Source of the DNA: Klebsormidium nitens | Taxonomy: Eukaryota; Plantae; Klebsormidiophyceae | Reading direction: 5' to 3' | Assembly: GCA_000708835.1 (NCBI GenBank) | Contig: DF236998.1 | Span: forward strand, 1-44,774 | DNA: 44,774 nucleotides | Part shown: in pieces, positions 11,501 to 39,200 of the stretch | How positions within the stretch are numbered: position 1 is the first letter of the stretch | Layout: each line of letters begins with the position of its first letter | The notes under the pieces: model-generated | What the model saw: only the letters and a program-made list of their open reading frames with translations | What the model was told of the DNA's origin: nothing | The model's database searches: none | Position numbers and translations under genes: made by a program

Positions 11501-13905
11501 GGCAGCGCTGAGCAGCCTAACCGCCGCGGCCGGCCGGCCGCTCGGGCTTCCTTACGGAGTTCGGACCCGGAACTGGAACGAATTGCAACCGAAGGCCGTC
11601 AAAACGACACGGAGGCGCCCTTCCGGTCCGCCTAAATCAAACCCTTGATGGGGAAACTCGGTAAGAAAGAGGAAACCAACCTTACTAACCCGTCGTCCAT
11701 ATGTTCCAACGTACAGTAGGAGAATATAAAGCAAGCCAACGCCAAAAGCTTTAGATCTTGTCCTGATCCAATCTGTTCCCACAGCCGGGACGGCAACGGC
11801 CACGGCATCTCTCTGTTGCTCCTCTACAAGGAAACCAAGACGGCTCGAATCAGACGAGGAGGGCCGTCGCTTTTCCGGCCGCGGAGCAAACAGCGGAAAA
11901 CAACACACTCCACAAGCGAACGGCATTTGTTGGACCGCGTGCGACATAGTTTGTCAGAACTTGTGCTGGGATTTCTGTGCAAAAACCTTGCATACATGTT
12001 TAATAAAACCAATCAGATCGCTGCCGTGGCTCTTCAGGCCACGGCGTCTGGTCTTCATCGCTCTAGGAATAGAAGCAACCAACGTGATGTGATTCCAGTA
12101 AGAACGAGCAAGGCCTTCGATCTTGGCTACAGCATCAAGTACGGAGTTTGTGCACAATCTGCAGAAAGACGTTCCTACGACCAGACCCAAGCATTGCCAT
12201 CCAGATAATTGGGGTGGAATACTTGGCCATCGAACTATCTCAATACTGCTGACTCCAATAGCACTGTTTGTGGTTGCAATTGACAGAAAGGCAAATGAGC
12301 AGCCTCCCTAAGTCAACACAATCGAGACAAGTAGAAGGGAAAAGACGTAAGGCTTCCTAGAAGTCAAGGGCTCTCAATAAAAAGAAGCCAAATCAGCATG
12401 CAAAGTTGAACGGAAGACCAGGCGAAGGGGCTGTCGGTGTTGCATTCACCGTAACCAATATTGGCCCGAAAAGACCATTGGCTCGACGTCATCGCCCTCA
12501 GAGTAATAGCTTGAGAGTCATGGGATTGTGACGAATGTGGCTTCTGAACAAAATTGTGGACAGCGTGTTTCAAGACTATTGTCTTACACCCAGATGAGGG
12601 TTGTCCCACAGAAGGCGATTATTTGTCTTCGGGGGATGCAGTGTCAGGCGGTCTGTGGTTAAACTGTGGGATGAAGCCCGACGTTCGTCCAGAAGCGGAG
12701 CAATAATCACAGGGAATGATCAGCGACGGAGAGCTTCGGAACTCGAGCCGGTGGAGTGGATAAGCAATCGCAGATTGTTAGCAAGACTAAGCATAGCAAG
12801 CTAAAGGCGATCACGTCCATCAAAGTGCAAATGGTCCTAATCAACCAGGGCATCATTGCCATCTGAAATGTCAAATGGAGCGCAGATTGGAACAAGCTCC
12901 AAGCACGGTTGGGAGCATGCATCTGTGGCGCCAACGAAATGAACTCCATCGGATGCACAGCAAATGAGTGGAGCGATATGGCAACAGACCCGTCGAAGGA
13001 GATCAGGATAACTGCAAGTGTTTTGGCTCAAGTGAAAGCACCACGACAGCAGGGTGCTAGATTTCAAGCCCCAAAAGCGCCTTGAAAGCAATGCGTTTAC
13101 TACGGGTTTGGCAACCCCTTTATGATTGAGCAAGAGGCTAGTCATCAGGTGGACGTGAGAATGTCGACTTGAAGATGCATGGAACGGAGGGTTTGGCAAG
13201 AGACGTCAGCATGTGGTCAGCATGCAGTCAACTCTGGTGACGTCATCACTGGTCTTCTCTGATCCCCATGGACTAGTGCTGACGTCACCGGAGTTTGCTA
13301 TGGCCATTCATAAGCCGTTGCCTGCTCGGCACGCCCATCGGACTCTGAAGCTCGCTCACTGTGGCTTTGAAAAGGCCAAGGCAGTCTGTCTTCATTGTCC
13401 TCAAACAACACTATAATTGGAACCACTCACAGGAACCGGCCAGATGGCAACGCAAGTTGGAAAGGGCCGTAGAAATAAGGAGCTTGCTGTTTCCAAGACA
13501 CGCGAAGCAGATAGGACAGCCCGCATAAGACAAGGGTTCGGCACGCAAGTCAGCTTCCGTCCTGACTCGACCTGAGAATTGATGCATTTCTTTTCAGACA
13601 ACACCAGTAAGCGAGAAAACGTGATTCGAAGTGCGACAGAATGCTGGGAAGTGACGCTCCTAGGCGGGAGCTTGATGCAAACGAATGTTTTCCGTGAATA
13701 TTATTGGAAGTCTTTGGGTGCATGTAAGGTGACTTGATTTGGTAAGGAGAGACAGAGAGTGGCTTCATAACAGTCGCCTTCAATGCAAGACTTAACGCAT
13801 CCAAGTGTAACACGCTGTAAAACGCTTAAGGGTTTTGTACCGTAAAGAGATGTCACACGTCGTTGAAAGTTTTGATCAAACGCACAACAAAGCTACTGGC
13901 GACTC

Positions 13906-14077
13906 TCAGTTTCTGCTGTGCATCCTCCCGCTCTCGGATCCAGCGAACGGGTCGATGATGGCATTGATGACGGCCGGCTTCTTTGCGGCAAACGCTTCCC
14001 GGCAGGCGGCGGCGAGCTCGGCCGGGGTCCTCACAAAGTACCCCTTGCCTCCGAAGGCCTCGATGATCTGGTCGTAT
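13906..14077 (-). CDS. HACL1: Duplicated terminal exon 13b (HACL/OCD C-terminus ...SGRMHSRN*)
   Basis: Acceptor ttatccag|ATAC; [21 protein letters not shown]...[19 protein letters not shown]; 172 nt like exon 13a. Expression unproven. Confidence 0.7.
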
Positions 14078-14530
14078 CTGGATAAAAAGAGAGGAGGAGA
14101 CTGTTTAAAAACAAGTTTATCGAGACGACGAGAGACGAGAACGCGGTGAAAATGCACTGACGGTAAAGCGTTATATAGACGTCAAGCAGACAGAGATGTT
14201 TCGGCTTGGCCCGGTGCATTAAAGAGCAATGAGCCGTGACTTGGAAGGAACAAGTATGATTGCTGCAATTTCCTATCTGACCTTTTTTCCCCGAGAAATC
14301 TGACAATCATCAGCCAGGCACCGGTTACCAACCAAAACAGCGCGAACGTCAGGAAGCACAGCGTTAAGCCTTGAAACGTCAACGGTATCGAGGCATCAGC
14401 CTCCAGATCTCCCAACTTTGGGCACTATCCTGGATCCCCAACTTCGAAGTAGCCGCTCTGTCCGTGTGAGCTTAAGGATACGAGAGACTGCCGAAGCAAG
14501 CGGCATAGCGTAAACGGAATACGTCCGTAC

Positions 14531-14673
14531 CTTGCTTCGGACACAAAGTCGGTGGGGGCCGGGTCGGACGCATACGGACCGCCGAGCTCCGCGTCCTCCC
14601 GGCGGACGCCGCCATAGATGCCGCTGTTGTTGAACACAATCACGACGAACGGTAGGTTGTACCGGACAAGCAC
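14531..14673 (-). CDS. HACL1: Duplicated exon 12b (ThDP/Mg-binding NN segment)
   Basis: cag|GTGCTT..AAG|gtacgg; [48 protein letters not shown]; 143 nt. Confidence 0.7.
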
Positions 14674-15057
14674 CTGCAACATGCGAACGTCCAGATTTTG
14701 ATTGCGAAATCAAAACAAAACTTGCGTGGGGGATTCATGGGAAGAAGTTGGAGACAGCCGTACATACAGCAGGTTACAAAGATGCGGAATGAACACTGAG
14801 CTTCGAATGGCGCAGAAGCCAAAAATCTTATGCTTTCCGCCTGGCTAGTCGCTTGCAACATGCAATTCCGGAGTCTTTTGAGAATGTTTTGAACACCCAA
14901 TTGAGTGTTGCGTTTGCGTGAGAGGCGTTCGAAACAGCGTCTCAAGAATGCGCACTCCGCGCATTGCAACAATGGGAAACGAACACCTAGCGTCGGGGGG
15001 ACCAGAGGCCGAGGACTCGATGTATGGGCCTGGGCTTTGCAGACCAGGACTCGCTGG

Positions 15058-15360
15058 ATGCCGAAAGCGGGGTCGACTTCGACGGCCGCCACAAACCGTT
15101 TTCCGTCCTTCCTCGGAAAATCATACCCAACAAACTTGGAAACTGACTATGATGAGCTTTTTGTTGCCTCAATCTCAACGGCATTGATAGCGAAGTTCCC
15201 CTCTTTGGCGACCACCCGGCGTTTTCCGTCCTCTTACAACAGTCCTACAGTTTTTGGCTGCTTAGCCAACGATTTTAAAACGGGTTAGGAGAATTTTACC
15301 TCAAACGCAACGACGCGAAACTTAAACGCAGGAATTCCCTCAACAACGACTACGACTTGA
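15058..15360 (-). pseudogene. Decayed copies of the 3' half of exon 11 in intron 11b
   Basis: 15058-15112 reads DGKRFVAAVEVDPAFG; 15166-15230 reads [21 protein letters not shown]; 15300-15359 reads [19 protein letters not shown]|gtaaaa. Compare exon 11 [23 protein letters not shown]|gt. Confidence 0.75.
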
Positions 15361-15411
15361 CGCGGGGTTAATACCACCAGAGCTGGTTACGAACGAAGGG
15401 TTTGTTTTTAC

Positions 15412-15645
15412 CTCGACTTCAACCGCGCTAAACCCGACCGCGGAGTCCCCCTCGACGGCAACCACGAGTCGCTTCCCGTCGTTGACAACCGCGGCCGCAA
15501 TCGCGTACCCCATGCCCACGCCCATGGTTATACCCCACGTGCCAGCGTCGAGGCGCGTACGCGGCTCTTCCTGGTTGAGAACCGTCCGGCCGACGTCCAT
15601 CGTATTGGCGCCCTCGGAAACCAGGATCGGGTGGGGGCCTTCAAC
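15412..15645 (-). CDS. HACL1: Duplicated exon 11b (GDS ThDP motif), with one extra codon
   Basis: ccag|GTTGAA..GAG|gtaaaa; [20 protein letters not shown]...[13 protein letters not shown]...[13 protein letters not shown]; 234 nt vs 231 nt in copy a. Confidence 0.7.
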
Positions 15646-15752
15646 CTGGAGAGTTGCACAGAGGGTTAGTAACGTTTGTGGCCTTCAACCGATCATGCTT
15701 TACAAAGAAGTTAAAGAATTTTGAAGTAGTGTCAAGAGTCCACAGCTTCGGT

Positions 15753-16630
15753 CTAGTTCAGTAGCGTCCGGCCGACGTCCAGCATGTCGGCACCCTCGGA
15801 AACCAGGATCGGGTGGGGGTTCTGCACCTGAGACAAAGAAGAGATTAGAAGAGGGGTAAAGGAAAAAAGTTGGCGGTACCGGGATAGAAGAGGGCGTCAA
15901 GGCGCGTACGCGGCTCTTCCTGGTTCAGCAGTGTCCGGCCAACGTCCATTGTATTGGCGCCCTCGGACACCAGTATTGGGTGGGGGCCCTCCACCCAAAC
16001 AGAAAGGGGTTTTAAAAAGGGGTTAGGATTGGTTTGCACAAGCCGGGGCTTGAAGAGGAAGTCGAGGCGCGTGCGCGGCTCTTCCTGGTTGAGCACCGTC
16101 CGGCCGACGTCCATCTTATTAGCGCCCTCGGAAACCAGATTTGGGTGAGGGCCCTCCACCTGAATGAAAGTAGGGCTAAGAATTGGTTTTGGACCTGTGG
16201 GGTTCGACAGAGCGTTGGTGATATTTAAGGTCGGGTTAAGTTGTGGTTTCACAGTACGTTCTGTTTGAGTACCGTCCGACCGACGTGCATCGTGTTGGCG
16301 TTCTTCCGAGACCAAGATCGGGTGAGGGGCCTCATCCTGAGAAAACTGGTCGAGAAAAGGAGGTCAAGGTAGCTGAAAAGAACGAAGCTTACAGAGGGCG
16401 CCTGAGCTGCATACGCTGCTCTTCCTGGTTGAGCACGGTCCGGCCGAGGTCCATTGTACTCGCGCCTTCGGAAGCTAGGATCGGGGGTCCTTTGACCTAC
16501 GGTTTAACAAGGGCTAACTCAAACCCTGAGTCGAGTCAAAGGTTCATAGCGCGCATTCTTAACCCACTCTTACCCCACTCTTCTTTCCACCTTGGCGAGC
16601 TTGTCCCGCACGACCCGCATGCTGTACTGA
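15753..16630 (-). pseudogene. Stutter array in intron 10b: five copies of acceptor + 5' part of exon 11, and one copy of the exon 10 end + donor
   Basis: Copies start at 15827 ([24 protein letters not shown]), 15994 (acceptor lost), 16159, 16336 (frameshift) and 16496 (VKGPPILASEGASTMDLGR). 16591-16629 reads YSMRVVRDKLAK|gt. Confidence 0.85.
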
Positions 16631-16753
16631 CTTTACATCACGGTTTTGCAAGCGCCCACTTACTGGGCAAGTCACAACCCAACCCCGGTAGACAAATTGA
16701 AGTTAAAAGCCCCATCGCATTGAAACCCATCTCACAACCCGTTCCTAACCCAC

Positions 16754-17011
16754 CTTGGCCAGCTCGTCCCGCACGACCCGCATGCTGCACTGGAAGTTCA
16801 TCGGCACCACGTCCTTCGCCAGCGATTCCGCCAGCTTCATTCCGTTCGCTTCCGCTTTCTCGCGGAGCTTGGCCACCCAGGGGTGGTCTTTCCCAAGCGA
16901 GAACGGTTCGTCCTTGATGGCGACGTTGATCTGCTCGAGGACAGCGTTGGCGTCGCCGAGAAGGGGCACGGCGGGCTTGCGCAGCTTGAGCTCGTCCTCC
17001 GAAATGTCAAT
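16754..17011 (-). CDS. HACL1: Duplicated exon 10b
   Basis: tgcag|ATTGAC..AAG|gtgggt; [21 protein letters not shown]...[11 protein letters not shown]; 258 nt; 12 differences from 10a, 10 of them synonymous. Confidence 0.7.
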
Positions 17012-17374
17012 CTGCATAAGAGAATTGTTTTGTTCTGACAGTCTCTTACTTTTCTGCTCCGGCAATGTGCTTTATTGGTTGTGGAACGGAACCGCCAAAG
17101 TTCTGACTTACTCACAAAACTTCGACGGGTTAGGAGATTCGGGAAATAAACAGCCAGGCTACAGAAATTTGTCTTTGCAAACTGTGAAAACAATCAGAAA
17201 TCAGAGAGAGGCGACGTTGCATTGCCGCTTCAGTGTCCAACCAAACCACCAATTGTACAATCGACATCTTTGCGAAGTCAGCAATCACAACATGGAAGTC
17301 AGAGGAAGGTCCTTGACGATTCTTAGTCTCTTCCTCCGAAAAAAGAAAAGCTGAGTGTGATCTAAGGGTATTGC

Positions 17375-20300
17375 AGAGGGCCTTCAGAACATCAGGACTG
17401 GATGGCCAAGGGTGACCACGCATGTCGTCTTCATTGCCCTTCAACAAAAAGCCATCAGCTTCAGAAGCAAAAGCGGTAACCCTTCTTTGCGGGGCCAAGA
17501 CCGCAGGCGACGAGTGCACGTGCGCTTAGCGGCAGCTATTCAAGGACATATGAGACCTGAAATGACTTCGAAAGCCGTCCAGCATAGAGCAAAAACAGAA
17601 GAAAACCTGTGAACTGCGGTTTTGTGGAGGTTCAGTTTGCAAATCACTTGAATTGCTCGTTTCAAGATTAACAACCGAGCGACCAGAACCCAGATACTAG
17701 AATTGCAGATTCCAACGTGCTTCGTTGCGTGCAAGGGCAATCACAAAGTCGGAGTTCCTGGCCACGCACAATGACCGTCATCATCGCCCACGACAAAAAG
17801 CGTATCAGAGGTTACCAGGAAAGGAAGGGTCCACCAGCGAAGACGTTGCCCATATTCAAGCAAGAGAGGTGGACAATCTGCACTTGCCGATGCGGGGCGA
17901 ACTAGCGTCAAAATTCAAGTGAAGAACTTAAGCACCGGACCATGGTGTCCCGCACACTTTCCAGAACGTGAGTGGGTGACGCCATCGGGACCAAGTACCG
18001 TTCACCAGTTGAGACTAGTCAAATGATGACACGGCAAGGATGCCGGACTTGCAGTCTTTACATGCTGCAGTGCTGCGCTCACTAGATCTCAATGCAGGAC
18101 GTCAAGAGTCAGCTAGATACGTAAGCTTTGTGATTTCTGCTGCCGCGTATTTCGGCGTATTAAGTCACGGGCTCCCGGTTCAAAACTTTGAAAACTGGCC
18201 CAGACGGCCATGGTGGTGAGTCGTCCTCGCCCGTCATGTTTTACAACATCCAAAGATAGCAGCAAGAGTTCTCCTGCTTTGGGGACCAACATTCAGCAGC
18301 TCTTAGCAGATTGACGACGACGGACTGGACCATGCGTCAGATGGGCGAGCAAAAGGCAGAAGAACGATTTGCATGTTACCAAAAGCTTGCTAAAAATATG
18401 AAGAGGAGGCGGCAATACGGTAGGAAGAAGATTTAATGAGACGCTGTCACGATGGTTCCGAGGTTCTTTAGATTATTCGCGGGACACAGTTTCAGAATGA
18501 TTTGACAGGCGATCCGATTTGGGAAAATGGCCCCTAAGGGGCCAGGAATTTATTTATTATCGCTCTCAAAATCAGCAAAGTGAGTGTCGAACCTGATTCG
18601 GTTCTCAACGAAACTCTCTAAGCAGACGGCTTCAGTCCAACTGTTTTCAAAAACCAGGAAAATCAAACTCCCCGGACATGTACAGCCAGGCGCGATGGGA
18701 TTCGTCCTTCGGCTGCAATCGCAATGAGATCTAGAACACTGTACTGCCGTTTCGCTAGTCAAGCTAAGCACCAGTTGTTCACAGGACAACGCGGCTTGTC
18801 TGTAAGCACAGCGAAAAAAGAGAGATCAAACTTCCTTCGAAGTCGAAGAGATAATCTATCCCTTTGATTCTGTACACACTGGAAGGTGAATAGTAATCCA
18901 CGGCTGCAGAGGGCATTCAGAACGGTTACACAAAGCCGGCGTGCAGCGGCCAAGATTAACCCCGCACGTCATCTCTCACTGCCCCCTATACACAATCCTG
19001 TCAGCTTCAGAAGTGGCATGCTTCTACTTTAGGCCAGCACTCGAGGCCAAAAACGTGTGTGCCGCTAGCGGCAGCTATCTGCTGTACTGTACATGAGGGG
19101 ATCATACAACCGATTCACAAAAGTGTCATGTAGGCACTGAAAAATTACACAACCTACGGTTTGCGGTCTAATGTATGTTTTGACTGTAAAATACACAGGA
19201 TTCGACGTCCCCGGTGAAGAGAAGAAAGCGGGCAGAAAATAGGGGAGGCCAGTATGCTAACACGTCATCATCGCCCATGTGAAGAAAACCCGATAAGGTT
19301 CTCAAATAGGTGGGGTAAGACAGCGAGGGTAGTTGACGATATCAAGCAAGCAAGTAAACAGTCGCCAACTGACAGGTAGACTAGTTTCACAAATCACCTT
19401 GTAAGCACATGTGCTAGCGCTGACCATCGCGCCGACAAGCGTTTTTTTCAGGTCGACGTCCGTGGTATTTGATGCTCGTCACCTTATCAAACTACGCAAG
19501 ACATATATAGGCAAGGAGGCAGCAACCATGAGGTTATCGCATGCTGCATTCCTGCAAATCCTGGAGACTAAGCATCACGCTCCAAGTCGGCTCGCTTCCT
19601 ACGGTATGCTTGACAACATAGTCCGCAAGATGACTCACAGGCTGTCCGGGATCGTCCACCTATGGCCCAAGACGGCCATGGCGGCAAGTCGTCCTCGCCT
19701 GTCAGCTTACGACTTCCAAAAATAGCAGCAGGCAACGCCCTTGTTAGGGCCTCAATATTCAGCAACGAAGCAGCAAGGACGGACTGGAGCAGGTGCCAAA
19801 TAGACGAGCAAAGGCCGCACGGTCAATTCTGCAAGCCGGCAGATGCTCGCTTAGGAGTTCAACAGGAGGAAGTAAAAAGCAAACCGGACAAGAACCTGCA
19901 CGGCCCTAAAACCCTAAAACCCGAAGAAAAGTTGTTTTTCCGGAATCTGGCGAGATCAATCTCAATTGGTCGTTCGAAATTTAGGCATCCGAAAAGCTGA
20001 ATGGCCCCTCAAGAGCCAGGAGCTTTGACGTCATCGCCCTCAGAAGCTTGCAAAGGGGCCCTCGATGCTGTTTCCCAGCATGTGAAGCGTCAAACACACT
20101 TGCTAACCTGCCATGACTAGGATACTAACTGCCAGACCGGACTGGAGTCCTGAGTCGGAACATGCTGAAACATCCTACTTTTGAACCGTCCACAATGCGA
20201 CCTCTAAAATTTAGCAAAAGACGTGGCGGCAACCGGACACCGATGATGGTGAGTACAGACACCGATGCTGACGTCATGCGACTCCTAAGGCTTGCGAAAA

Positions 20301-22906: not shown

Positions 22907-23391
22907 GCAAACGACTGAGGAATCTGCCAACTTCCTAATTCCTATGCAGAAACGGACACGAAATCTCCCTTGCACAGAAGAGGAAGGAACTGAGAGTGCA
23001 CTGTGGCTCTGATCACGACTCATCTTTCGACAAACGACGAGTCGCGAAGGACTTTTGTGATACCAGCTTTACGAACAAGAGACACGCTGATCGTTCCCAA
23101 GGCTGCTGGCAACGTTGGACATCGTTCAGCAGCGACAGGCCGTACAGTGACTAGTCGCAGCGGAATCAGACGACGAAGAGCAGTCACGACAAGCCGCAAT
23201 TCCTTGTAGAAGCCCAAAGACTGCCAAAATGAAATGCCCAAAACCTGCATTTACGGCACTATCCGACACTATCCCACAGTCCAACCCAATGATTGGCAGG
23301 ATAGTCGATGGCCGAATTCTGGGCCTATGATGATCCAGAAAGCAGGTCTGTGAGCGACGTGACGTCGGTGTGACGCCACACGGCACCTCAC

Positions 23392-23543
23392 CTGGACGTA
23401 CTTGACGTCCTTGCTTTACCATGGTGGCTCCCCGGAGTGCAGCAGCCAGTTGAGTTGCGCGCCCACGACGAGTACCACGTCAGCGCCCACGAGCGCAAGG
23501 CCCTGAGCGGCCCCTGCGTTCAGCGGCTCGCTTTCCGGCACGA
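23392..23543 (-). pseudogene. Truncated copy of the 3' end of exon 9, marking the duplication junction
   Basis: [49 protein letters not shown]|gtgagg, homologous to 35983-36134. In-frame TAA at 23416-23418 and no acceptor. Confidence 0.9.
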
Positions 23544-24058
23544 AAGTATTGGTTGGCGTTTGACCGGAAATCCGGTTTGGTCTGCGAGCTTATTGCATGG
23601 TGGTAATTGATCACACCAGTCTTCAGTGAGGCATGTACTCTCCTTAGATGCCTAAAGTACGACACAACTCTAGCCTTCACAACCAACCTAGCCTGTTCAC
23701 AAACTCAGCATTTGATCTGGAAGGGACGAGCGCAAGAACGTGGCGCTCCCTTTGAGGCCGGGTGCTTTTCAATCGTAGAATGGGTAGGAAAATGATGGCC
23801 GTGCGATCGAGTGCATGAAGTCAGCGCTCCCAGGCGGAAGCTCGACAAGGCCTTTTTGTAAGCCTCTGCATGGCCGCTTTCAATCGGAACGCAGGGAGGA
23901 TAATGATTTCACTTCCGTCGCCTTCAACGGCAGACGGTATTTAAGAATCAGACTGTACACGCTCTGAAGCTTTCAAGTCTGCTATCGTAAAGAGGTGTCA
24001 AACGTCGTTAAAGTTCTGATCAAACCCACAACAAAGCTGCTGGCAAGCGAAGCAACTC

Positions 24059-24230
24059 TCAGTTCCTGCTGTGCATCCTCCCGCTCTCGGATCCAGCGAA
24101 CGGGTCGATGACGGCGTTGATGACGGCCGGCTTTTTCGCGGCAAACGCTTCCCGGCAGGCGGCCACGAGCTCGGCCGGAGTCCTCACGAAGTAACCCTTG
24201 CCTCCGAAGGCCTCGATGATCTGGTCGTAT
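24059..24230 (-). CDS. HACL1: Exon 13a (terminal)
   Basis: ttcag|ATAC..AACTGA; [12 protein letters not shown]...SGRMHSRN*, matching the plant HACL C-terminus (AESGRLQHKN, recalled). Confidence 0.92.
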
Positions 24231-27200
24231 CTGAATCAGGAAAGAGGCAAAAAATATTTAGAGACGAGATTGACAAGACCACAAGAGACGAGAACGCGGT
24301 GCCGCTGCGCTCCGTGCAGAATCCTTATGTAGACGTCAAGTAGACAAATATGTTCCGGCTTGGCGCAGGGCGTCGCGGACCAGTAAGCCGTAACTAGAAG
24401 GAAATGAGTGGGTACTTTTGCTGCAGATTTCCTTTTCAACCTTGTTTCCCCAGCGGATCTGACGAACATCAGCCCCACAATTGAAACCGAAGCGCGAACG
24501 TCAGGAACCGCGGGTTACCAGCATTGAAGACGTCATCTATCAGGGCTCAGCCTTCAGAGCTCCAACTTTGGGCAGAATGGGCAGAATAATGGACACCCGA
24601 CTTCGAAGAAGCCGCATTATCCGTGTGAGCTAAGAATGCAGAAGTCTACCAAAGCAAGCGGCATAGTAAAATGGGACTACGTCCGCACCTTGCTTCGGAC
24701 ACAAAGTCGGTGGGCGCCGGGTCGGACGCGTACGGACCGCCGAGCTCCGCGTCCTCCCTGCGATCGCCGCCGTAAATGCCGCTGTTGTTGAAGACGATCA
24801 CGACGACCGGCAGGTTATACCGGACAAGCACCTGCAACGTGCGGACGTCCGAAGTTTTGAGAAAGTTTCGATCCGGGCGGTCTGCAAACCTTGCGCAAGA
24901 GGCGTATGGAAAGAAGTTGGAGACATTGCGAACGGCAGCAAGTTACAAAGAGGCGAAAAGAACACCCAGCTCCAAATGACGCAGAAGCCGAGAATGATAA
25001 GTTTTGCGCATCTGCAACACGCCGGTTCCGAAGTTTCTGGAGAAGGGGTTGTTACGCGCACAAAGTGTGTGAGAGGTTTTCAAAACAATGTTCTAGACAC
25101 TGCGCACTCCGCGCGCTTCAACAACGAGAAACGAACACCGAGCGTCGAAACGACCGGAGGCCGAGGATGTCAGATTCGAGGCCTGGGCTTTGCAGTCCAG
25201 GAAGGCTGAAAGCCAAGAGCCAAGTCGTCTTCGTCAGCCGCCTCAAAGCGCTTCCTGTTCTTCTCCGAACATCAAATCCTGACAAATTGCAAATTGATTA
25301 TAACGGAGCTCTTCCTTGCCTCGCCTCAACGGCACTGAAAGCAAAGTTCCCCTCTTTGGCGACCAAGAGGGGCTTCTCGTCCTTCCCGAAAGAGTGTGAC
25401 TGTAAAGCCGAAAGTCTAGTTAAGAAACTCTTCTCCTTACCCCAACCTCAGTGGCACTGAAGCCAAAAGCGAAGCTTACCCTCGACGACGACTACGAGGC
25501 GCTTCGAGAAAGGTATTCCAAAAGATCGAAATGCTGGTTAGAAGAAAAACATTTCCCTGGCCTCGAGTGCAACGGTACTAAACCCAACAGTTGTACAGAC
25601 TGGTCAACACAAACCCTTCCCTCACCTCGACCTCAACGGCGCTAAACCCGAAAGCGGAGTCCCCTTCGACGGCAACAACGAGTCTCTTCCCGTCGTTGAC
25701 CACCGCAGCCGCGATAGCATACCCCATGCCCACGCCCATCGTGCCCCACGTGCCGGCGTCGAGGCGCGTACGCGGCTCTTCCTGGTTGAGAACCGTCCGT
25801 CCGACGTCCATTGTGTTGGCGCCCTCGGAAACCAGGATTGGATGAGGGCCTTCAACCTGTGGGTTTACAGAAATTTGGTGACCATTTTTGGCCTTCGGCT
25901 GATAGTGTTCCAGAGGGTTGGTGGGGTTTTGAGTCGGGTTAAGGTAAGGGTTCAAGTGCGTTCTGGTCGAGCACCGGCCACTCAACGTCCTCCGAAACCA
26001 GGACTGGGTGAGGGCCCTCGACCTGAGAAAAAGGGTTGAAAAAGGGTGTTAGGGTAATTGCGAGGGCGTCGAGGGGAGTGCGGGCCTCTTCCTGGTTGAG
26101 AACCGTCCGTCCGACGTCCATCGTGTTGGCGCCCTCGGAAACCACGATCGGGATGGGGACCTTTAACCTAGAGAATTATACGGAGGGTTAGTAACATTTT
26201 ATGGCTTTCAACCGATTGTGTTCCACAGAAGGTCAGTGGATTCCTTGAATTGGGGTAAAGGTTTATAGAGCATTCTGGTTCAACACCGTCCGGTGGACGT
26301 CCATCCCGTTGGCGCCACCGGGAACCGATGTGGGCCGTCGACCTTTGGGATTCTGCGGATGGTTAGCGAGGTTGTTGATTATTCTAATATGACACGGTGT
26401 ACTTGCTCCGCATGCCGGAGCAAACCTAGGAACTACTGAACGGAAATCGGGTTGCAGTATGAGAGTTTAAACTCTGCCAACCCTTCACAAAGCAAACTGC
26501 CTGGTGGAAGCCCGTGGATGCCTCTCAGCAGTACTGGTAGACCGCTTGAAGCAGATTCAGCCTTTTTGAATTTATCTCACAACTTCAAAGAGCTGGAAAA
26601 ACCCGCGATTTGCTGCCAAACCCTCTTCAGAACAGTTCCGAACCCGTCCTTGATCCAACTCACAAACCATGTCTCACCTCCCAGGGGGAACTCGTTACGC
26701 AAACCTTGCATTCCGCTTCTTAATGGACCAGAAAAAAAAATGCTGTGTGCGCTCTCAGCGCCTTCAAACCAACTTTATACCACCGCCGAACAATCTCGAT
26801 TCACCCCGAGACTTGAGGTCGTCTGGGGGTGATCCAAAGTTGGTTTGGAGGAGCCAACCCACATCAGCCCACACTTGACCCACTGGAAACCACTCCCACA
26901 TCACTCTCCACGCACTCTTAACCTACCTTTAACTCACCTTTGGCCATCTCGTCCGATACCACCCGCATGCCGCACCAAACAGTCCCAGCACCACAATCTT
27001 CATCAGCACCATATTCCCCCAAGGCAAATCGAAACCCCTCCATACAAACGGAAATCAGCCCCAACTATCTAAAACCGATCTCAAAACCGGTCCTAAACCC
27101 ACCTTGGCCAGCTCGTCCCGCACGACCCGCATGCTGCACTGGAAGTTCATCGGCACCACGTCCTTCGCCAGCGATTCCGCCAGCCTCTTTCCGTTCGCTT

Positions 27201-30200
27201 CCGCTTTCTCGCGGAGCTTTGCCACCCAGGGGTGGTCTTTCCCAAGGGAGAACGGCTCGTCTTTAATGGCGACGTTGATCTGCTCGAGCACCGCGTTTGC
27301 GTCGCCGAGAAGGGGCACGGCGGGCTTGCGCAGCTTGAGCTCGTCCTCGGAGATGTCAATCTGCGAAGAAACCACAAACCTTTTGTTTGGATAAGACAAA
27401 GTCTTGGTATTTCTTATACTGCTCCGGCACTTTGCTCTGATAAGGTGCGAACACCACTGCTACAGTTTATGTTACTCACCAAAAGCTACGAAGTTCGAGA
27501 TCCCTGAGCACGTACAGTCAGCTGGATAAATGCTTCTACAAACTGCCATTGCTAAAAACACCGCACTCACTGCAATGCCATCACTTGTACACAAGACAAG
27601 GCAACGCAAATGTAAGGCAAGCACGTTGGGGGAAGTCAAAGGGAGCTTTCTCTCATATGGCTTTGTTCGGCATACAGAGTGTGATTTGGAGGTTTGAGAA
27701 AGGCAGTCAAACCGCTGCAAGAAATCAGGTGGCCAAGAATGACCAAGCATGTCACATTTCATTGCCCTTCTTACTAACATCTTTTGGAGAAGCCGCGAAG
27801 GAACTTCACGCTTTTCCATGTGAAACCTGGAGGCGACACAGATGTGCAGCTAGCAGCGGCCATCCAAGGACGTACGAGAACCGAAAAAGCGTGCAAGCCG
27901 TCACGTACAAAGTGAAAGAAGGAGGACAACCTCTGATTTGCGGTTCCGTGAAAAATTGGGTTTGCAAACCAGATTAATGCTCGAGTAAACAACTAAGCGA
28001 CCAGAGTACAGATACTATCAACGCAAAGTGCGACGGTGCTTCGCTGCGTGCAAGGGCAATCATACGCATGCAGGCAAAATTGCCCCCTCCAGGATTTTGC
28101 ACAACTGACACGTCATCATTGCCCACCAAACAGCGTGGTAGAAGTTACAGGAAAGGAAGGGTCCACCAGCGAAAAAGTTGCCCGGGATCAAGCGAAAGAG
28201 GTGCACAATTAGCGACTTGCCAACTGCGAAGTGAAGTAGCGGCAAATATCGTGTGAAGCATGTAGCACCGGAAAAAATCATGGTGTCAGGCAAACGTTTC
28301 AAAGCGTAATTGGATGACGTTAGAGGAGTTAAAAACTGTTCACCAATCCAGGCTGGTCAAGACATGACAAGGCGAGGAGGCAGGAATTCCAGTCTTTATA
28401 TGCTGCTGTGCTGTACTTCGTTGAAGTTCAATGAACGACGTCAAAAGTCAGCTAGATACCAACGGTTTGTGGTTTCTGCTGCCACGTACTTTGCAGCAAA
28501 ATCCCGGACTATCCGAACGCAACGCTATTCAAGATTGGCCCAGACGGCCATGGTGGTGAGTCGTCCTGGCCCGTCATGTTTTGCAACATCCCCAAATACC
28601 AGCAAGAGCTCTCCTTGTTTGAGCAACAACAAATTTCAGCAGCTCTTAGCAAACGGACGACGACAGATTGGACCATGCGTCAGATGGACGAGCAAAAGGC
28701 ACAAGAACAACTTGCATGTTACCAAAAGCTTGCTTAAAACATAAAGAGGAGGCGACAATGGAGTAGAAAGTACATTCGTTGAGAAGCTGCCACAGCGTTG
28801 TAACCTTGGCAAAACCACTCAGGTCCTTTCGAGCGTTTGCCGGACAAGCTTCCCCAAAGTCAGCCAAACAATTCTGGACCTCGAATGGCCCCTTAGGGGC
28901 CAGGCAGTATTGCATCATCGCCCTCAGCTTTCGCAGAGGGCCTCTCTAACCTGTCCGGTAAGGAAGGTGTGAATCAGACGACATCAGGCTTTCTTTACTT
29001 TGAGGAAGCAGGGAATTCGAATACCCTGTACATGTACAACCAGGCCCAATATATTCGTCCTTACAGCTGCCAGCAATGAATAAAATCGTACGAGACTGCT
29101 CCCGCAATCAAGAAAACGACCTTTTGAATACAAAAGGGGAGACAGAAACAGAAACAGAAAACCGGGGTGACATAAGCATATCTGAGGTCAAATGAAAGCT
29201 CCTTTGGGGTTTCTTCCTTTAAATTTGTGTGGCGGCATAAAGCGAACCGTGATTCGCGGCGAGGTGCCGAGGGCATTCCGAAGGAGTAGGCAGAAAAGCG
29301 AACGGCAGTGGCCAAGAGTCACCCCGCACGTTATCTTCACTGCCCTTCATTGAAAGGTCTCTCAGCATCAAAAGTGGCATGCTTCCATACTAGGCCAGCA
29401 CTGGAGGGAAAAACTATTCGGGTAAAAGCGGCAGCTATCTGCTGTACATGAGCGGATCGACCGAGCCTGAAATCGGCTATGTAGGCACCCTAAAAACACA
29501 CAACTTATGGTTGCGGTCTTATGTATGTTTTGACTTCAAAAAAGACATGTGTCGCTTCTCCGGTGAAGGAAAGACAGCGGGCAGAAAACGCATCATAATC
29601 ATCCACGACCGGCGACGTGCGTCGTTGCTTGCACGGGCAATCACACGAAAGCACAAGCTCTGGCCCCTGGCCATGTATGCTGAAACGTCATCATTTGCCC
29701 TTGAAAAAAGGCCATTAAGTTCCTCAAAAGGTAGGACCCAACACTAGCGAGTGCATTTCACGACATCAAGCAGCACGTCAAGAGCTAGTCGCCAAACGAC
29801 AGGTTGACGAGTCTCAAAAGTCCCCTTGTAAGCACATGCGATAGCACTGAACACCGCGCCGACAGCGCTCTTCTGAAAACAGATCAGATTGACATCAGTG
29901 GGATCTGGTGCTGGTCATCTTCTCATATCATTCGGAATTTTACAAGTCAAGGAGGCAGGTATCGTAGTCTTCACATGCTGCATCCCAGCAGGTTGTGGAG
30001 ATTCAGGCATGACGCCCAAAGTCAGCTACCGTCTTACGGTATGTTTGGCAATATTAGTCCGCAAGACGACTCACAGGCTGTCCGGGTTTCTCTTACGACC
30101 TCTGGCCCAAGACGGCCATGGCAATAAGTCGTCCTCGCCTTTTAGCTTTCCAGAGATATCAGCAAGAAACGTCCTTGTTGGGGCCTTAACATTCAGCAAC

Positions 30201-33200: not shown

Positions 33201-36200
33201 GCACAAGGGAATCGGTGTCAGTCAACCATCCTCCACATGTGACACAGAGAACGACGTGGCAATCAAAGCAACCCTGGACCTTAGCCCTGCTGGGCCATAG
33301 CCACCTGTTCATCATTGCCGTCAAGCAAAGAAAGACAGCTCACATCAAACAATGGGCGAGGCAAGCCGGCACAAAGGATAGCAACTTAGACCTCGTAACG
33401 AGATAATCATTTCTGCAACCATCCTCTGCGCAGGCAAAAACCACCTTCAATCCGAACCCCGGACACCTGTTCCAAAGAACGTTGCATTTTGTGGAAGGTA
33501 GAAATTAAGACTTCACAATATTGAACCACCTTTCAAGGAAGAGTGCGCAACCTCAGAGAGCGCATTCCGACCGATCTCGCCAAAATAGTTAGCCGAAAAA
33601 CATTGTCCTAGAGCTTTAGTAGAGCCAAACGCCACCTTGGCAGAACAGCTCTCGAGAAAACACCTGTCAGCGATTGTTATAGAGGACACTATCGTTGGAG
33701 TCAACGGGGCTGCGAAAGGAGAGCACGTAAGTATGAAAACGCCAACACCTTTCAATCAGCAACAAGCACTTCACGGCGTCCGGCACAAATCCAAGGTTGG
33801 CAACGCGGTGCACATCTTAAACGCAGGCTTTACTGAGAAGCGCCAATGAAAGCGAAAGTCTCATAATGTCATGCCGCGTACACTAGCCAGCGTCTGCTTT
33901 TTATAAGACACGGTGCTGAGGCGGTCAGGCGTCCTCCGCTCCGAACCGTGACACAAAGGCCGTAAAAGCTGTTAGAAGCTGATTGTCGCTTACATGTGCC
34001 TCAAGGCAAGCCCGTCTTCTAACCCAGCGCAACGTGAGGTGCAATTCATGTGGATGACTAGCAACCGGCAAAGGCAAGAGACAGGTCAAAATTGGATAAG
34101 GCTTGTACAGCGAGACCAGAGGAAGCACATTGAAGAAGGCCAAGCCAACTTTCACGTGTGGATTCGGCTGACACTTCAACACTCACGGAGGTTTTTACGA
34201 TTCTAATAGCACCAAAACCCAGCCTGTCCGGACGATCATCATACATGGCATGGCGTCAATATTTCATGGCCCGTAAGCTGGCCAAAGGCGCCATTCATCA
34301 CCGCCAAGCTTCTTACGACCTCCAGTACTCAAACGAGGCACCCCACCATGCTGCTTTCAGCACAAGAAAGAACAACGTGCTGCAAATCTTGGATACTGCA
34401 CACAGCGAGACTTGCTGCATATGGGCACTAAAGAAATGATTGAGCTCGTCACGCCCGTTCACGCTGCTTTCACAAAAGAAGAATGGAACTGTTGACAATC
34501 TGGCGGTTGATGGCCCGCAACATCCTGCAATATCTGATCTCTGCTCTCAGTTCTTGAAAGTGTGCATCTCCCGATCCACGTATGCAGGTGATGGGCTATC
34601 AGACAACAGGGATATAATACCTGCCCTTAAGGCCAACCTAGTTGGTCATAAAAGCCCTCAATAGTACCGTTTGAGCAACAGTCATGTTAACAAAGTAATT
34701 GCTTCAATCGCGTTTCCCAAGCCTGAAACTGTGCATTGCAGTCAAAATCATATGAGCGAGTATTCCTTGAATCTGCTGATCTCACCACATATCGCACCAG
34801 GCAGGCCAGCGTACTCGTCACCAACCAACAGAAGCGAAATGTCGGACGGAGGCCGTTCCGTGATGTCACAGGCTCAGATTTGCTTGATCCTAGTGGACTC
34901 GGACTACCCAAAAGTTCTCACGAGCCTTTCCTAGCATGGCACCAACGAAGGGTTGAATAACGTTTGCATCTCCTAGCATCACCGACCTTAGAAGGGTGGC
35001 CTTAGAGAACTGTGGTGTGATGTTAACAAGGTGACTGTTTGAGGCGTCACCAAGGATCTAAGCAGACTTTCGTAGAGGGAAGCAAACTTAATTCCACAGG
35101 CGAGGGCGTCGCAAGTTGTAGGAACGTGTGGGTTGCAAACACCAAACCAACTTTTCTTCATGGCCCAAAAGACCGGCGACTGCATATCTAAAAAAACGGC
35201 TAGTAGCGGAACGACATGTGCAATAGCAATACGGGCTGAGACACACAGCGCTAGAGAACGCAAGGTCTCCAATTGGAAGGACAATAATGGACGACAGGCT
35301 GAGAGGGCGTGAAACTCGCGCGGCAGGGTAAGAGAAAGTCAACAAGAGGGTTCATATGGCGAGGACATATTGCAGACTAAAGCGTCTGCAAGAACTTGGA
35401 ACCTAGCGTGCGCAACAGCAGCAGAGGGACAAGGGCAATCGACTACACTTTCCTGATTGGCCCTGAGATGCCGTGGCCTGAATCTTCATTGCCCGAAATG
35501 AACGACTGCATTGCCAAATAGTAAGTAGCATACACGAAAGACAAGCCTTCTGCCGCCAGCGCGAATCAGGGCGTGGACGCAAGTGCTTGGGGGTGTTGAC
35601 CCATTGGCCACATATTTCCACGACGATGTCGCAAAGGCTTCGTGAAATATGGCCTCATGAACATGAATTCCTGGTAAAGGCAATTTAAGGCGGCTGGCGG
35701 CATTGCCGTCGTCATCAGCTGGAGCGAATACTACAGGTAGACGGGAAACACTTACATGGGATTACTCCAACAAGTGGATCAGCGGTATAAGCACTCGGAA
35801 ATTTGTTTTTCTTTGAAGGACAACAGACGAGGTCAGAGTTGACACTCCTGCTTTCAACCTTTCACAAGTTTGACAGTCATTTCACACTGAATGACAAACG
35901 TATTCCCTCTCGGACAATTCTGACTTTGAAAAGCAGGCTCCAGAGCAACGTGACGTCACGCTGACGTCACCTGCAACCTCACCTGGATGAACTTGACGTC
36001 CTTGCCCCACCGCGGCGGCTCCCCGAAGTGCAGCAGCCAGTTGAGCTGCGCGCCCACGACGAGTGCCACGTCAGCGCCCGCGAGCGCGAGGCTGCGCGCC
36101 GCGCCCGCGTTCAACGGGTGGCTGTCCGGCACGACGCCCTTCCCCATCGGCGTGGCGATGAACGGAATTCCGGTCCGGTCCACGAGCGAGCGGATCCCGT

Positions 36201-39200
36201 CCTCCGCGTGCGCGTACGCGGCGCCTTTGCCGAAGACGACGAGCGGGCTCCTGGCGTTCCGGAGGAGGGAGACGGCGGCGGCGACGTCGGGGGGGGGTGC
36301 GGAGAGGGCTTTGCGGAGCCCCCCCGGAGTGTAGAAGGGCTGGATGTCGACCAGCGCGTTGAGCAGGGCGGCGGCCTCGGCTTCCGAAACCTCCTGGTGA
36401 AGAACCTCTGCATGACGAAAAACTTCAAATAGGACAAATTAAGGAACTTAAACCCGGTTTGAGTAAGGGTTAGACATACAGCAGGCAGCAAGGGTTAGGT
36501 ACTGGCGTTTCTTCGACATTGGACGACTGTGAGACGGTCTTTACGACAATGACGTGGTGTGGAAAGAACTTGGGAAAAGACTTGACTCAGTGAGACGAGT
36601 TTGAGGACAAGCTTGCGCTAGGATTTGGAAGAAGGCGTCCGAGCACCCCAGGTCATCCTTGGGTTTCGGAGTAACAGTACAATTCTTTGAGGTCAGGACT
36701 ATCCGTGAACGAGGTTGGAAAGAGGTTCGGACGCTTTGTGAACGAGGCGAAAGCAACAAGTTCAAAAACCGACGGGATTTGCCAACTTTTGACAAGTGCC
36801 TTGAAGTGGATGAGCGAAGACATGGGACACAGTATGTGCGTCATTGAGTAGACCCTCCCGAGCTGGCAAAACCTTCATGACGCATGAAACACCAGCAATT
36901 TGGCACAATTCGTAGTCCAAAGTCCCTCCATATCCAGCCCTTTCAATAATTTCCTCGGATTTGTGTCGAAAGAAAAGAAAACGACAGAAAAGAAAAGAAA
37001 AGAAAACGAAAAACTCAAAAGATCGACCGACCTGCCGGCACGTCGACGTAAGCGGCCCCCGGCCTGCCCGCGGCCGCGGCGGACACCGCTGACTGGACGG
37101 TGTTGGGAACCGCGCGAACGTTCTCAGCGCGTCCGGCGTACTTGACAAACGGTTTTACGATCGCGATCTGGTCGAATTCCTGGAAGCCGCCCCTCCCGAC
37201 CTGCACGGAGTGAACGCACTTCTTTGAGCTGCCGTTTACAGGGCCTCACATCCGCGCCTATGGTTATAGAACAGACTCCTGCAAAGTCCCGGTCCTGAAG
37301 GCACGCACATATGCTGTCACAATTCAGCGCATCAACTTGGCAGGGCAGAAAACAGACTCATGTCAACAGAAAGGAGACCGTCAATTCCGTTTCAGTAAGG
37401 CATGTCGTGCCGTGCTTTGTCCAAAGTAGAGGCGAGCTAGACCTGCACCTCCGTAAGAGACAGAGATGGAACTGACTAAATCAATCTGCTCTTAGGAGCT
37501 TGAAGATGTTTGGTCACCACAGAATGATACCCCGATCGAGCTGAAACCGTAATAACAACGTGCTGACAGCAAAGTTTCGACACTGCTTCCAACAAAAGAG
37601 GATGCGAGTCCCCTTTGCTAACAAGCAAACGACGGCAAGGTAAGCAGAATAAGCGCGAAGCTCACCTCCTCAGTCGGAGCGCTCCCCGAGATCATAACGA
37701 TCGGCCAGCTGTTGGCTAACCCGTTGCTCAACCCGGCTAACCCATGTACCGCCCCCGGGCCAGACACGGTTAAGAGAGCCCCCGGGACGCCGGTTAGGTA
37801 ACCCGCAGCGCCAGCAGCGTAACCCGCGGCTTGCTCGTTTCGTAAACCGATGAAGCGAATGCCTGCTTTCTGAGCGAAGGTTGCGAGGGCCGTTACAGGG
37901 ATGCCAACAACACCGAAGAGATACCTGGGGGGAGGGGGTTGGGATGGTTGAACGGAAAACTAAAGCGACGATAAATCGAAACAACTTGACCAACTACTGG
38001 GAGAGTTTCGACTTTTGCAAACAGAATTCGGGGGTATTCTCAGCGACCAGAATTCCACAAGCTATCGAAGATTTTTGAAGAACAGAGATCCGAAGATGCC
38101 TGAGTATGCATTCAATGTCCCGCACGTCCTTTACATTTCCGTGATTTTTCTTTGACAAGTTTCTGCCGTTCAGCTGACACCGCTCAGAATGACCTAATCT
38201 TGCAGCATCTGCAAGTCCTGCAGATAGCTGGTTACATTGATGACTCAAAAGATATTTGGGCGTGTTCCCTGCCCTCAAGCAAAGCGTAGCTTCAGGTACC
38301 AGACTAAACGATAATCAGTGGTAGTAACTCTTTCACTGGCTCTTGCTTGCAATGGGCAAGACGATCCGGACAAGAGTCGAGAAATGCACACACTTCCCGG
38401 ATAGCCCTACGAAGCCTGCCGAAGGTGCCGTTTCCACACACTTCGTCAACCAGAAGCCGTCCTTAGAGACACGGAGCCACGTCCACTATGCTCAAAATGG
38501 CCAATTATCTCAAGAAGCTTTCACCCCGTTGCAAGAGAAGCTTGCTGATTACTACTGCCTCCTACATGGACAGAGAAATTCTGGGAGAACCTTCCAGTAC
38601 CTTATGAAAGGTGCGCAAAGTGCACATAAAAGCATTCACAGAATTTGAAGACTAGAGAAAATTCTCGATCAAACAAACGCTACGCTCGCTGTACGTTGTT
38701 TGCCATAAAGTTCGAAAGATCGAAGGCTACTACAGCAAATGACAATGCGTTCACTAAAAGGAGCTAGCAGCCACCAGAGTCGTGGAAAAGGAATTTTGAG
38801 AGAGGTTTGCTGATGACATTTCTTCAGCAAACTTTCCAGGCGGATAGCTGCATAAGCTGAGCATCTATGCTACCGCAACCATGGCCTTCTCCGGATGAAC
38901 AAGACGAAGAACGACGACAGCAAGCAATCAGATTATGATGAGATACTAATGTTTACAATTGACAAGTGCGGTCACGAGTTTGTTCAAACTACGTTCTACG
39001 ACTCCTCAACTTCTGCCTAGACGCTTGTCCTTCTACCGCCTTCATTTCCAGCCCTTCCAATTCCTGAAGCCACCGCTAGAGCCCTTCGTTTACGACTCTT
39101 TTTGCGTCCCCTCGTAACGCTCAACCCCGCTACGAAACTCCGACCCCAATTGAGCGGCGTGGAAGGATTCCACTCACTTGACGCCCATCTTCGCCAGCGA

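What the first reader, a model, noticed from the sequence alone, without database searches (positions are those of the whole stretch)
13906..17011. Second, intact 3' exon cassette with a purifying-selection signature: possible alternative C-terminal half
Exons 10b-13b keep every splice site, phase and the stop codon. By manual count they differ from copy a at about 45 synonymous sites but only 7 amino acids plus one inserted codon over about 267 aa, while flanking introns are far more diverged. Copy b has no 5' end of its own. It could be expressed only by splicing the exon 9 donor (35982) to the 10b acceptor (17012), skipping copy a over about 19 kb. That would give two isoforms differing in the ThDP-binding half.
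Basis: partly seen in the sequence, partly recalled or inferred. Interest (0 to 1): 0.75.

Follow-up and report, generated by a model that had tools for sequence, protein, structure and literature searches.

The report
Spare, selected 3' exon set in algal HACL gene
A green alga's oxalate-breakdown gene carries a second, intact copy of its last four coding segments that natural selection has kept readable as protein. The copy most likely serves as an alternative back half of the enzyme, but no RNA evidence could be reached to show that it is used.

Summary
The window is Klebsormidium nitens scaffold DF236998.1 and is not human. The minus-strand oxalate-CoA ligase/HACL fusion gene has a second exon 10-13 set (17011-13906) with every AG/GT site, phase and the stop kept.

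- **Copy a versus copy b:** 48 synonymous and 7 non-synonymous differences plus one inserted codon (dS 0.30, dN 0.012, omega 0.04).
- **b branch alone (two single-copy relatives as outgroups):** 15 synonymous and 5 non-synonymous changes; neutrality rejected at P=2.5e-6.

New facts:
- The tandem duplication starts inside exon 9. That 5'-cut fragment (23585-23392) decayed neutrally: 16 N/7 S, a TAA stop and a 7-nt deletion. It serves as an internal control.
- Synonymous divergence is close to intron divergence, so exon-only gene conversion is not the cause.
- GenBank already lists copy b as a separate truncated gene (GAQ80210.1). This is an Augustus model with an implausible extra exon.
- Four of the six b-specific changes hit positions that are invariant or nearly so in 181 homologues, in or near the ThDP-binding motif.

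Splicing of the exon 9 donor to exon 10b is the most economical route. Cassette b starts inside the middle domain, and that orphan piece is still constrained. The route remains untested because no transcripts could be reached. Recent loss of function cannot be excluded.

Other notes of this scan report duplicated alternative exons elsewhere in this genome.

The parts
16754..17011 (-). Exon 10b. It encodes the last part of the ThDP-enzyme middle domain plus the linker. It differs from 10a by 12 nt and 2 amino acids (K58M on the b branch, K59R on the a branch).
   Evidence: Pfam PF00205 profile positions 101-137. Exon 10 starts at residue 351 of P0058, inside PF00205, which spans 251-379.
15412..15645 (-). 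Exon 11b, the start of the ThDP-binding (PP) domain. It carries the inserted Ile codon (15531-15529) in GTWG^TMG, and F155V in GDSAFGFS.
   Evidence: Exon 11b scores 79.3 bits against OXC/HACS 8vzc; exon 11a scores 88.6.
14531..14673 (-). Exon 12b, which holds the rest of the GDS-X24-NN ThDP motif. It carries V172F and D186V.
13906..14077 (-). Exon 13b with the TGA stop (13908-13906). It carries V251I. It ends in HSRN, as in copy a and in both outgroups.
13841..13900 (-). The first part of the 3' UTR of copy b. It is 54/60 identical to the matching stretch after exon 13a, which is as conserved as the exons.
   Evidence: Binomial P=6e-4 against a 72% neutral identity.
23392..23585 (-). Exon 9b fragment: only the 3' 190 nt or so of the 425-nt exon 9, with no acceptor. 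It has an in-frame TAA (23418-23416) and a 7-nt deletion, and the PMGKG motif is destroyed. The GT donor at 23391 is still present. It acts as a neutral control of the same age as cassette b.
   Evidence: On the b branch it shows 16 N/7 S and 0.145 substitutions per site.
17015..17017 (-). A b-derived in-frame ATG two codons upstream of the 10b acceptor. It is the start codon of GenBank model GAQ80210.1. Its context is weak (T at -3, C at +4).
15753..16498 (-). Five decoy copies of the exon 11 acceptor plus the first 99 nt or so of exon 11, lying inside intron 10b with a period of about 165-180 nt. Two keep the reading frame, and GenBank's b model builds a 72-aa exon from them. None is followed by a GT donor.
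   Evidence: (families D1-D5).
24059..27360 (-). Copy a, exons 10a-13a. These are used in GenBank model GAQ80211.1 and translate exactly to its C-terminal 268 residues.
35983..36407 (-). Exon 9a. It ends in phase 0 at the CAG|gtgagg donor, the only intact donor that could feed exon 10b in frame.

Best explanation
A tandem duplication specific to the K. nitens lineage copied the segment from the middle of exon 9 to at least 270 nt past the stop codon. Unit a spans about 36180-23788 and unit b about 23585-13615.

The exon 9 piece of unit b arrived without an acceptor and decayed. Exons 10b-13b and the start of their 3' UTR were kept by purifying selection as translated sequence. Exon 10b starts inside the middle (R) domain and in phase 0. 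The only intact upstream partner is therefore the exon 9a donor.

The most likely mechanism (inferred, not shown) runs as follows. Some transcripts read through the poly(A) site after exon 13a. They then splice 35983 to 17011, skipping cassette a. This would give a full-length ligase-HACL protein whose last 268 residues come from cassette b.

That half carries four unique changes in or near the ThDP-binding core. The b isoform would therefore be either catalytically re-tuned or beginning to lose function.
For: Shown:
- Intact splice sites, phases and stop codon.
- Omega 0.039 between a and b.
- On the b branch, 15 S/5 N, with neutrality rejected at P=2.5e-6.
- The exon 9b fragment, of the same age, evolved neutrally: 16 N/7 S, a stop and an indel. 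Fisher P=0.006 against exons 10b-13b.
- dS of 0.30 is comparable with intron divergence.
- Relatives L004 and L001 have a single cassette and short introns, so the duplication is recent and lineage-specific.
- The first 57 codons of 10b, the tail of the middle domain, show 4 S/0 N on the b branch (P=0.0035). Exon 10 starts at residue 351, inside Pfam PF00205, which spans 251-379.
- The 3' UTR start is 90% identical between the copies.
- No other coding ORFs lie between exon 13a and exon 10b.

Inferred:
- The 9a-to-10b junction itself.
- At the birth of the duplication this route needed no new promoter or start codon.
Against: - No transcript, junction read or peptide was seen. The protein collection holds only the two GenBank models.
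- The route needs read-through of the cassette-a poly(A) site and removal of a 19-kb intron, in a lineage where the relatives' intron 9 is under 1 kb.
- No docking/selector RNA complementarity above chance was found.
- Copy b has an in-frame ATG at -6, and GenBank models it as its own gene.
- The amino-acid changes in b fall on conserved columns as often as random changes would (3 of 5, against 1 of 25 for ordinary divergence, P=0.009). Together with a unique in-frame insertion, this fits a copy whose constraint was recently relaxed.
Confidence: 0.5

Rival explanations
1. Copy b is an independent, separately transcribed gene, as GenBank GAQ80210.1 implies. It would start at the ATG at 17017 and give a protein of about 270 residues: an orphan tail of the middle domain plus a stand-alone ThDP-binding PP domain. 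That protein could pair with a PYR domain supplied by another polypeptide.
For: - A b-derived in-frame ATG lies two codons before exon 10b.
- GenBank and UniProt list it as a gene.
- Split ThDP enzymes with PYR and PP on separate chains exist in other families (general knowledge, not tested here).
Against: - The model is an Augustus prediction, not transcript-based (PMC4052687).
- The model contains a 72-aa exon made of intron-10 decoy repeats, joined through a weak GAC|gttggc donor.
- The ATG has a poor context, and an ATG in an 18-codon open stretch is expected by chance about 1 time in 4.
- The ATG is derived in b, so it cannot explain constraint since the duplication arose.
- The constrained first 57 codons are only a small terminal part of the middle domain, Pfam profile positions 101-137 of 137. 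That piece is unlikely to fold alone.
Confidence: 0.15
2. Cassette b was functional for most of its history, by whichever route, but is now silent or freshly relaxed. On this reading it is a very young unprocessed partial pseudogene that has not yet acquired a disabling mutation.
For: - The b-branch amino-acid changes hit positions that are invariant or nearly so in 181 homologues. F155V: F in 180 of 181. Ile insertion: no indel in any of the 181. D186V and V172F: never seen.
- Their distribution over conserved and variable columns looks random rather than filtered.
- The numbers fit neutral evolution over roughly the last 7% of the branch. This is my own estimate.
- The 11b donor changed from gtgag to gtaaa.
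- The conserved GTGTACA element in the 3' flank is interrupted in b.
Against: - There are still no stops or frameshifts, and every splice site is intact.
- The one indel is in frame.
- Four of the six changes cluster within 63 residues of the ThDP core, which could equally mean directed functional change.
- The 3' UTR start is still 90% conserved.
Confidence: 0.25
3. The similarity of the exons is kept up by gene conversion from copy a into a non-functional copy b, not by selection on b.
For: - One run of 30 identical codons (codons 60-89), borderline against shuffling at P=0.047.
- Intron 10 shows repeat copies that look locally homogenised.
Against: - dS of 0.30 is close to intron divergence.
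- The differences that remain on the b branch are themselves 3:1 synonymous, whereas neutrality predicts 1:3.
- The identical run spans intron 10, so it is not one genomic tract.
Confidence: 0.05

Closest known systems
Alternative or mutually exclusive exons born by tandem exon duplication (general class; see PMC6071210 for the mechanism and for competing RNA structures)
   Same: Tandem homologous exons of equal length and phase, with conserved splice sites, and both copies under purifying selection.
   Different: - Here a block of four exons plus its own stop and 3' UTR is duplicated, so this is an alternative last-exon cassette rather than one internal exon.
- Alternative use is not shown.
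- No selector/docking complementarity was found.
Oxalyl-CoA decarboxylase / 2-hydroxyacyl-CoA lyase (ThDP enzymes; PDB 8vzc, 7ayg, 2c31, 2q27)
   Same: Cassette b encodes the end of the middle domain and a complete TPP_enzyme_C domain with the GDS-X24-NN motif. It is 97% identical to cassette a.
   Different: Cassette b has an extra Ile in GTWG^TMG, plus F155V, V172F and D186V. None of these was seen in 181 homologues. On its own it lacks the PYR domain and most of the middle domain.
GenBank GAQ80210.1, '2-hydroxyphytanoyl-CoA lyase' (K. nitens, 342 aa)
   Same: Covers the same DNA (17017-13906) and the same four exons.
   Different: It treats the cassette as a free-standing gene, and it adds a 72-aa exon made of intron-10 repeat copies. 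It is an Augustus prediction.
Unprocessed partial-duplicate pseudogene
   Same: It arose by segmental tandem duplication without the 5' exons or promoter, and its exon 9 fragment is a true pseudo-exon.
   Different: Exons 10b-13b show no disablement, and omega on the b branch is about 0.11.

Membership tests
ThDP-dependent OXC/HACL family | TPP_enzyme_C (PF02775) domain above the Pfam threshold | tested here: met
   P0167 (the copy-b model) scores 89.7 bits against a cut-off of 21.9. Copy a scores 94.3 bits.
ThDP-dependent OXC/HACL family | ThDP-binding motif GD(G/S)-X24-27-NN intact | tested here: met
   Copy b reads GDS + 24 residues + NN. Two positions inside the motif are uniquely changed: F155V and V172F.
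ThDP-dependent OXC/HACL family | Complete PYR, middle and PP domains on one chain | tested here: not met
   Cassette b alone has only the last 29 Pfam-matched residues or so of the middle domain plus the PP domain. The feature would be met only if b is spliced to exons 1-9.
Alternative 3' exon cassette from tandem duplication | Homologous tandem exons with the same lengths and phases, and conserved splice sites | tested here: met
   Exon lengths are 258, 234 versus 231, 143 and 172 nt. All sites are AG/GT.
Alternative 3' exon cassette from tandem duplication | Both copies under purifying selection at the protein level | tested here: met
   The a branch shows 2 N/21 S and the b branch 5 N/15 S. 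Both reject neutrality.
Alternative 3' exon cassette from tandem duplication | Transcripts that contain one cassette or the other, joined to the common upstream exons | not testable with these tools
   No transcript-derived protein of either copy turned up in the searches, which covered lengths of 58-185 and 340-1934 aa.
Pseudogene (unprocessed partial duplicate) | Disabling mutations, or omega near 1 | tested here: not met
   Not met for exons 10b-13b. Met for the exon 9b fragment only.
Independent gene as annotated (GAQ80210.1) | Its own start codon, and a product that can fold by itself | tested here: inconclusive
   An ATG is present at 17017 in a weak context. The product would start with an orphan fragment of PF00205. 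Promoter and transcription start are not testable here.

The most novel reading that the evidence does not exclude
K. nitens uses one promoter and one set of ligase, PYR and middle-domain exons with two interchangeable ThDP-binding halves. Cassette b, with its unique insertion next to the cofactor-contacting TMG and its changes inside and just after the GDS-X24-NN motif, gives the bifunctional enzyme a different catalytic behaviour. One example would be a shift between oxalyl-CoA decarboxylase and 2-hydroxyacyl-CoA lyase/synthase activity. The choice between halves would be made by poly(A)-site read-through and long-range splicing.
Probability: 0.2. Interest if true: 0.75.

Novelty: new member of a known kind. 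Interest (0 to 1): 0.5.

Why it matters
If the b cassette is spliced onto the common exons, this would be a clear, datable case in a streptophyte alga of a protein's catalytic half being swapped through a duplicated multi-exon terminal cassette. Documented mutually exclusive or alternative duplicated exons are scarce in the green lineage.

It also corrects the public annotation. The locus is split there into three gene models, and one of them (GAQ80210.1) is probably not a gene of its own and contains a spurious exon.

The b-specific changes at positions otherwise invariant in the ThDP site give a small, testable set of residues for anyone engineering OXC, HACL or HACS enzymes.

Tried and rejected
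- **Transcript evidence through the protein collection.** I searched with the exon 10b ORF, with the C-terminal region of a Chlorokybus fusion protein, and with the C-terminal region of the K. nitens protein P0058. These returned only the two GenBank models and foreign relatives. Cluster look-ups gave singletons. Proteins of 186-339 aa stayed unsearched.
- **Representative-library search with exon 10b.** It gave no K. nitens entry beyond fragments of relatives.
- **Metagenome scan with P0058.** It returned only one distant hit at 44% identity, so no further close relatives were found to test whether the duplication is shared.
- **Literature.** No paper mentions GAQ80210, GAQ80211 or this locus. 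The genome paper says the nuclear genes were predicted with Augustus.
- **Docking/selector RNA pairing.** I compared the start of intron 9a with the regions upstream of 10a and 10b. The longest complementary words (9-10 nt) are no longer than in shuffled sequence. An RNAduplex version timed out.
- **Alternative 5' exons between 13a and 10b.** No convincing coding ORF was found.
- **Assembly artefact.** Rejected: there is no N in the window, and the copies differ by 7% in exons and about 26% or more in introns.
- **Human origin.** Rejected: the window matches GCA_000708835.1 coordinates exactly.
- Exons were searched by reference, or through database protein ids. Exon joins were made only inside local scripts, for codon counting.
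Full report
**Source and setting**

The window has no N and about 51% G+C, and it carries a multi-exon gene on the minus strand. Exact look-ups place it at positions 1-44774 of Klebsormidium nitens scaffold DF236998.1 (GCA_000708835.1), and record coordinates equal window coordinates. It is not human.

The gene joins an AMP-binding oxalate-CoA ligase to an oxalyl-CoA decarboxylase/2-hydroxyacyl-CoA lyase (OXC/HACL). One exon (ORF 39174-39401) runs from the ligase C-terminus into the ThDP enzyme N-terminus.

GenBank splits the locus into three Augustus models (PMC4052687):
- a 511-aa ligase;
- GAQ80211.1 (618 aa, 39377-24059), which ends in cassette a;
- GAQ80210.1 (342 aa, 17017-13906), which is cassette b.

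**The observation**

The b exons are listed below.

| Exon | Coordinates | Length |
|---|---|---|
| 10b | 17011-16754 | 258 nt |
| 11b | 15645-15412 | 234 nt |
| 12b | 14673-14531 | 143 nt |
| 13b | 14077-13906 | 172 nt, with TGA |

Each has an AG acceptor and a GT donor, and together they give an open frame of 268 codons.

Against 10a-13a there are 55 nucleotide differences in 804 aligned sites, distributed 5/4/46 over codon positions. Nei-Gojobori gives Sd=48, Nd=7, dS=0.30, dN=0.0116 and omega=0.039. Copy b also has one inserted codon.

**Extent of the duplication**

A comparison of the window against itself shows that the repeat is much larger than the four exons. It includes most of the giant intron 9 and the 3' part of exon 9 (35930-36134 matches 23339-23543 at 81% identity).

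Exon 9a is 36407-35983. Its b counterpart begins only about 190 nt before the donor, so the upstream breakpoint lies inside exon 9. Downstream, a/b homology runs at least 270 nt past the stop, to a 23788 and b 13615.

The exon 9b fragment has no acceptor, a 7-nt deletion, a scrambled PMGKG motif and an in-frame TAA at 23418-23416. Its GT donor survives.

**Outgroups and branch-specific selection**

Searching with the exon 10b ORF found genomic contigs of two related algae:
- Logan SRR14092358-60 (loci L001-L003);
- a 51-kb JGI metagenome contig (L004).

Both have the same exon structure and 267 codons. Intron 9 is short in both relatives: under 1 kb in the Logan relative (read in L002) and about 0.6 kb in L004. 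L004 has a single cassette, with no second copy in 8 kb downstream. L001 has no exon 9 fragment within 1.2 kb of its stop.

Third-position distance is 0.17 between a and b but 0.45 between K. nitens and L004. The duplication is therefore specific to the K. nitens lineage.

Polarising each a/b difference with the two outgroups gives the counts below.

| Branch | Non-synonymous | Synonymous | Approx. omega |
|---|---|---|---|
| a | 2 | 21 | 0.03 |
| b | 5, plus the codon insertion | 15 | 0.11 |
| unresolved | 0 | 12 | n/a |

Against the neutral 3.1:1 site ratio, the b-branch count has P=2.5e-6. The a and b branches do not differ significantly (Fisher P=0.22).

The exon 9b fragment is the same age and gives the neutral picture on its b branch. 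It shows 16 N/7 S, codon positions 6/7/10, and 0.145 substitutions per site against 0.025 in exons 10b-13b. The Fisher test against the cassette gives P=0.006.

**Gene conversion**

Synonymous divergence (0.30) is of the same order as intron divergence. Local blocks are about 74% identical, and global JC distances are 0.39-0.45 for introns 11 and 12 and the 3' flank.

The remaining b-branch differences are themselves mostly synonymous. Conversion into a dead copy cannot produce that pattern.

The longest identical run (30 codons) is borderline against shuffling (P=0.047). It also spans intron 10, so it is not one genomic tract. I reject exon-confined conversion as the main cause.

**How cassette b could be expressed**

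Exon 10 starts at residue 351 of GAQ80211.1. That lies inside the Pfam middle domain (PF00205, residues 251-379). Cassette b therefore begins with an orphan piece of that domain.

Those first 57 codons nevertheless show 10 synonymous and 0 non-synonymous a/b differences. On the b branch the count is 4 S/0 N (P=0.0035). They have therefore been translated, and in a context where they matter. This points to junction with exons 1-9.

The only intact, phase-compatible donor upstream is that of exon 9a. No other coding ORF lies between exon 13a and exon 10b. At the moment of duplication this route needed nothing new.

The first 60 nt of the two 3' UTRs are 90% identical (P=6e-4 against the neutral level). 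This suggests that both ends are used.

I found no selector/docking complementarity.

The rival, a free-standing gene, rests on a b-derived ATG at 17017-17015. That ATG has a weak context, and the Augustus model around it also splices in a 72-aa exon made of intron-10 repeat copies.

**State of cassette b**

I aligned 181 homologues of the C-terminal half. The two a-branch changes (K59R, A233V) lie at variable columns. The b-branch changes are listed below.

| Change in b | State in 181 homologues |
|---|---|
| Ile inserted in GTWG^TMG | no homologue has any indel there |
| F155V (second residue after GDS) | F in 180 of 181 |
| V172F (inside GDS-X24-NN) | only V or I elsewhere |
| D186V (seven residues after NN) | D in 159; V never |
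| K58M | variable site |
| V251I | variable site |

Ordinary divergence avoids conserved columns: only 1 of 25 differences between a and L004 falls at columns with at least 80% conservation. For b the figure is 3 of 5 (Fisher P=0.009). Exon 11b also scores lower than 11a against solved OXC/HACS structures (79.3 versus 88.6 bits).

Two readings fit:
- directed change of the cofactor site;
- constraint relaxed during roughly the last 7% of the branch (my estimate), which would yield about this many random changes and one indel.

The data cannot separate the two readings.

**What could not be done**

No transcript-derived protein of either cassette was found in the length ranges searched (58-185 and 340-1934 aa). 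A metagenome scan gave no further close relatives. The literature holds nothing on this locus.

I did not send a joined spliced model of the hypothetical isoform to any search or folding tool. Exon joins were made only inside local scripts, for codon counting.

**Verdict**

The rivals are a recently relaxed relic (0.25), an independent truncated gene (0.15) and gene conversion (0.05).

Other notes of this scan describe duplicated alternative exons elsewhere in this genome, some with transcript support. I did not check them. They raise the prior slightly but are not evidence for this locus.

Noticed in passing
window 15753-16498 and 26066-26177 (minus strand); also L004:10871-10931: Intron 10 of both cassettes is partly built of tandem units of about 165-180 nt. 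Each unit carries a copy of the exon 11 acceptor plus the first 99 nt or so of exon 11. There are five extra copies in b and at least one in a, and one more in the relative L004. Two b copies keep the reading frame and are 88-90% identical to the real exon. None is followed by a GT donor. They are decoy 3' splice sites, and GenBank model GAQ80210.1 wrongly builds an exon from them.
   Followed up: partly
window 16587-16629 and 26935-26977 (minus strand): The same intron also holds a copy of the last 43 nt or so of exon 10. It is 93% identical in b and 67% in a, and lies about 163 nt downstream of the real exon end. The exon 10/intron 10 boundary has therefore been tandemly duplicated as well.
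   Followed up: no
window 24059-43572 (minus strand): GenBank splits what is evidently one ligase-HACL fusion gene into two models. GAQ80211.1 starts at an internal Met of the AMP-binding C-terminal domain. The single exon ORF 39174-39401 spans both enzymes.
   Followed up: partly
window 13780-13800 and 23950-23970; L004 about 12390; L001 about 3120: A short element, GTGTACA(A/G)(C/T)T..GAT, lies about 110-150 nt after the stop codon in copy a and in both relatives. In copy b an inserted T interrupts it (GTGTTACAC). It may be part of the poly(A) signal.
   Followed up: no
window 17012-23391 and 27361-35982: Intron 9 is 6.4 kb in unit b and 8.6 kb in unit a, but only about 0.6-1 kb in the two related algae. 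The expansion predates the duplication, because the two introns share homologous blocks along most of their length.
   Followed up: no
L002 112-603 (-) and 1415-1906 (+): The Logan contig L002 lists the same 163-aa product twice, on opposite strands. This may be an assembly palindrome.
   Followed up: no
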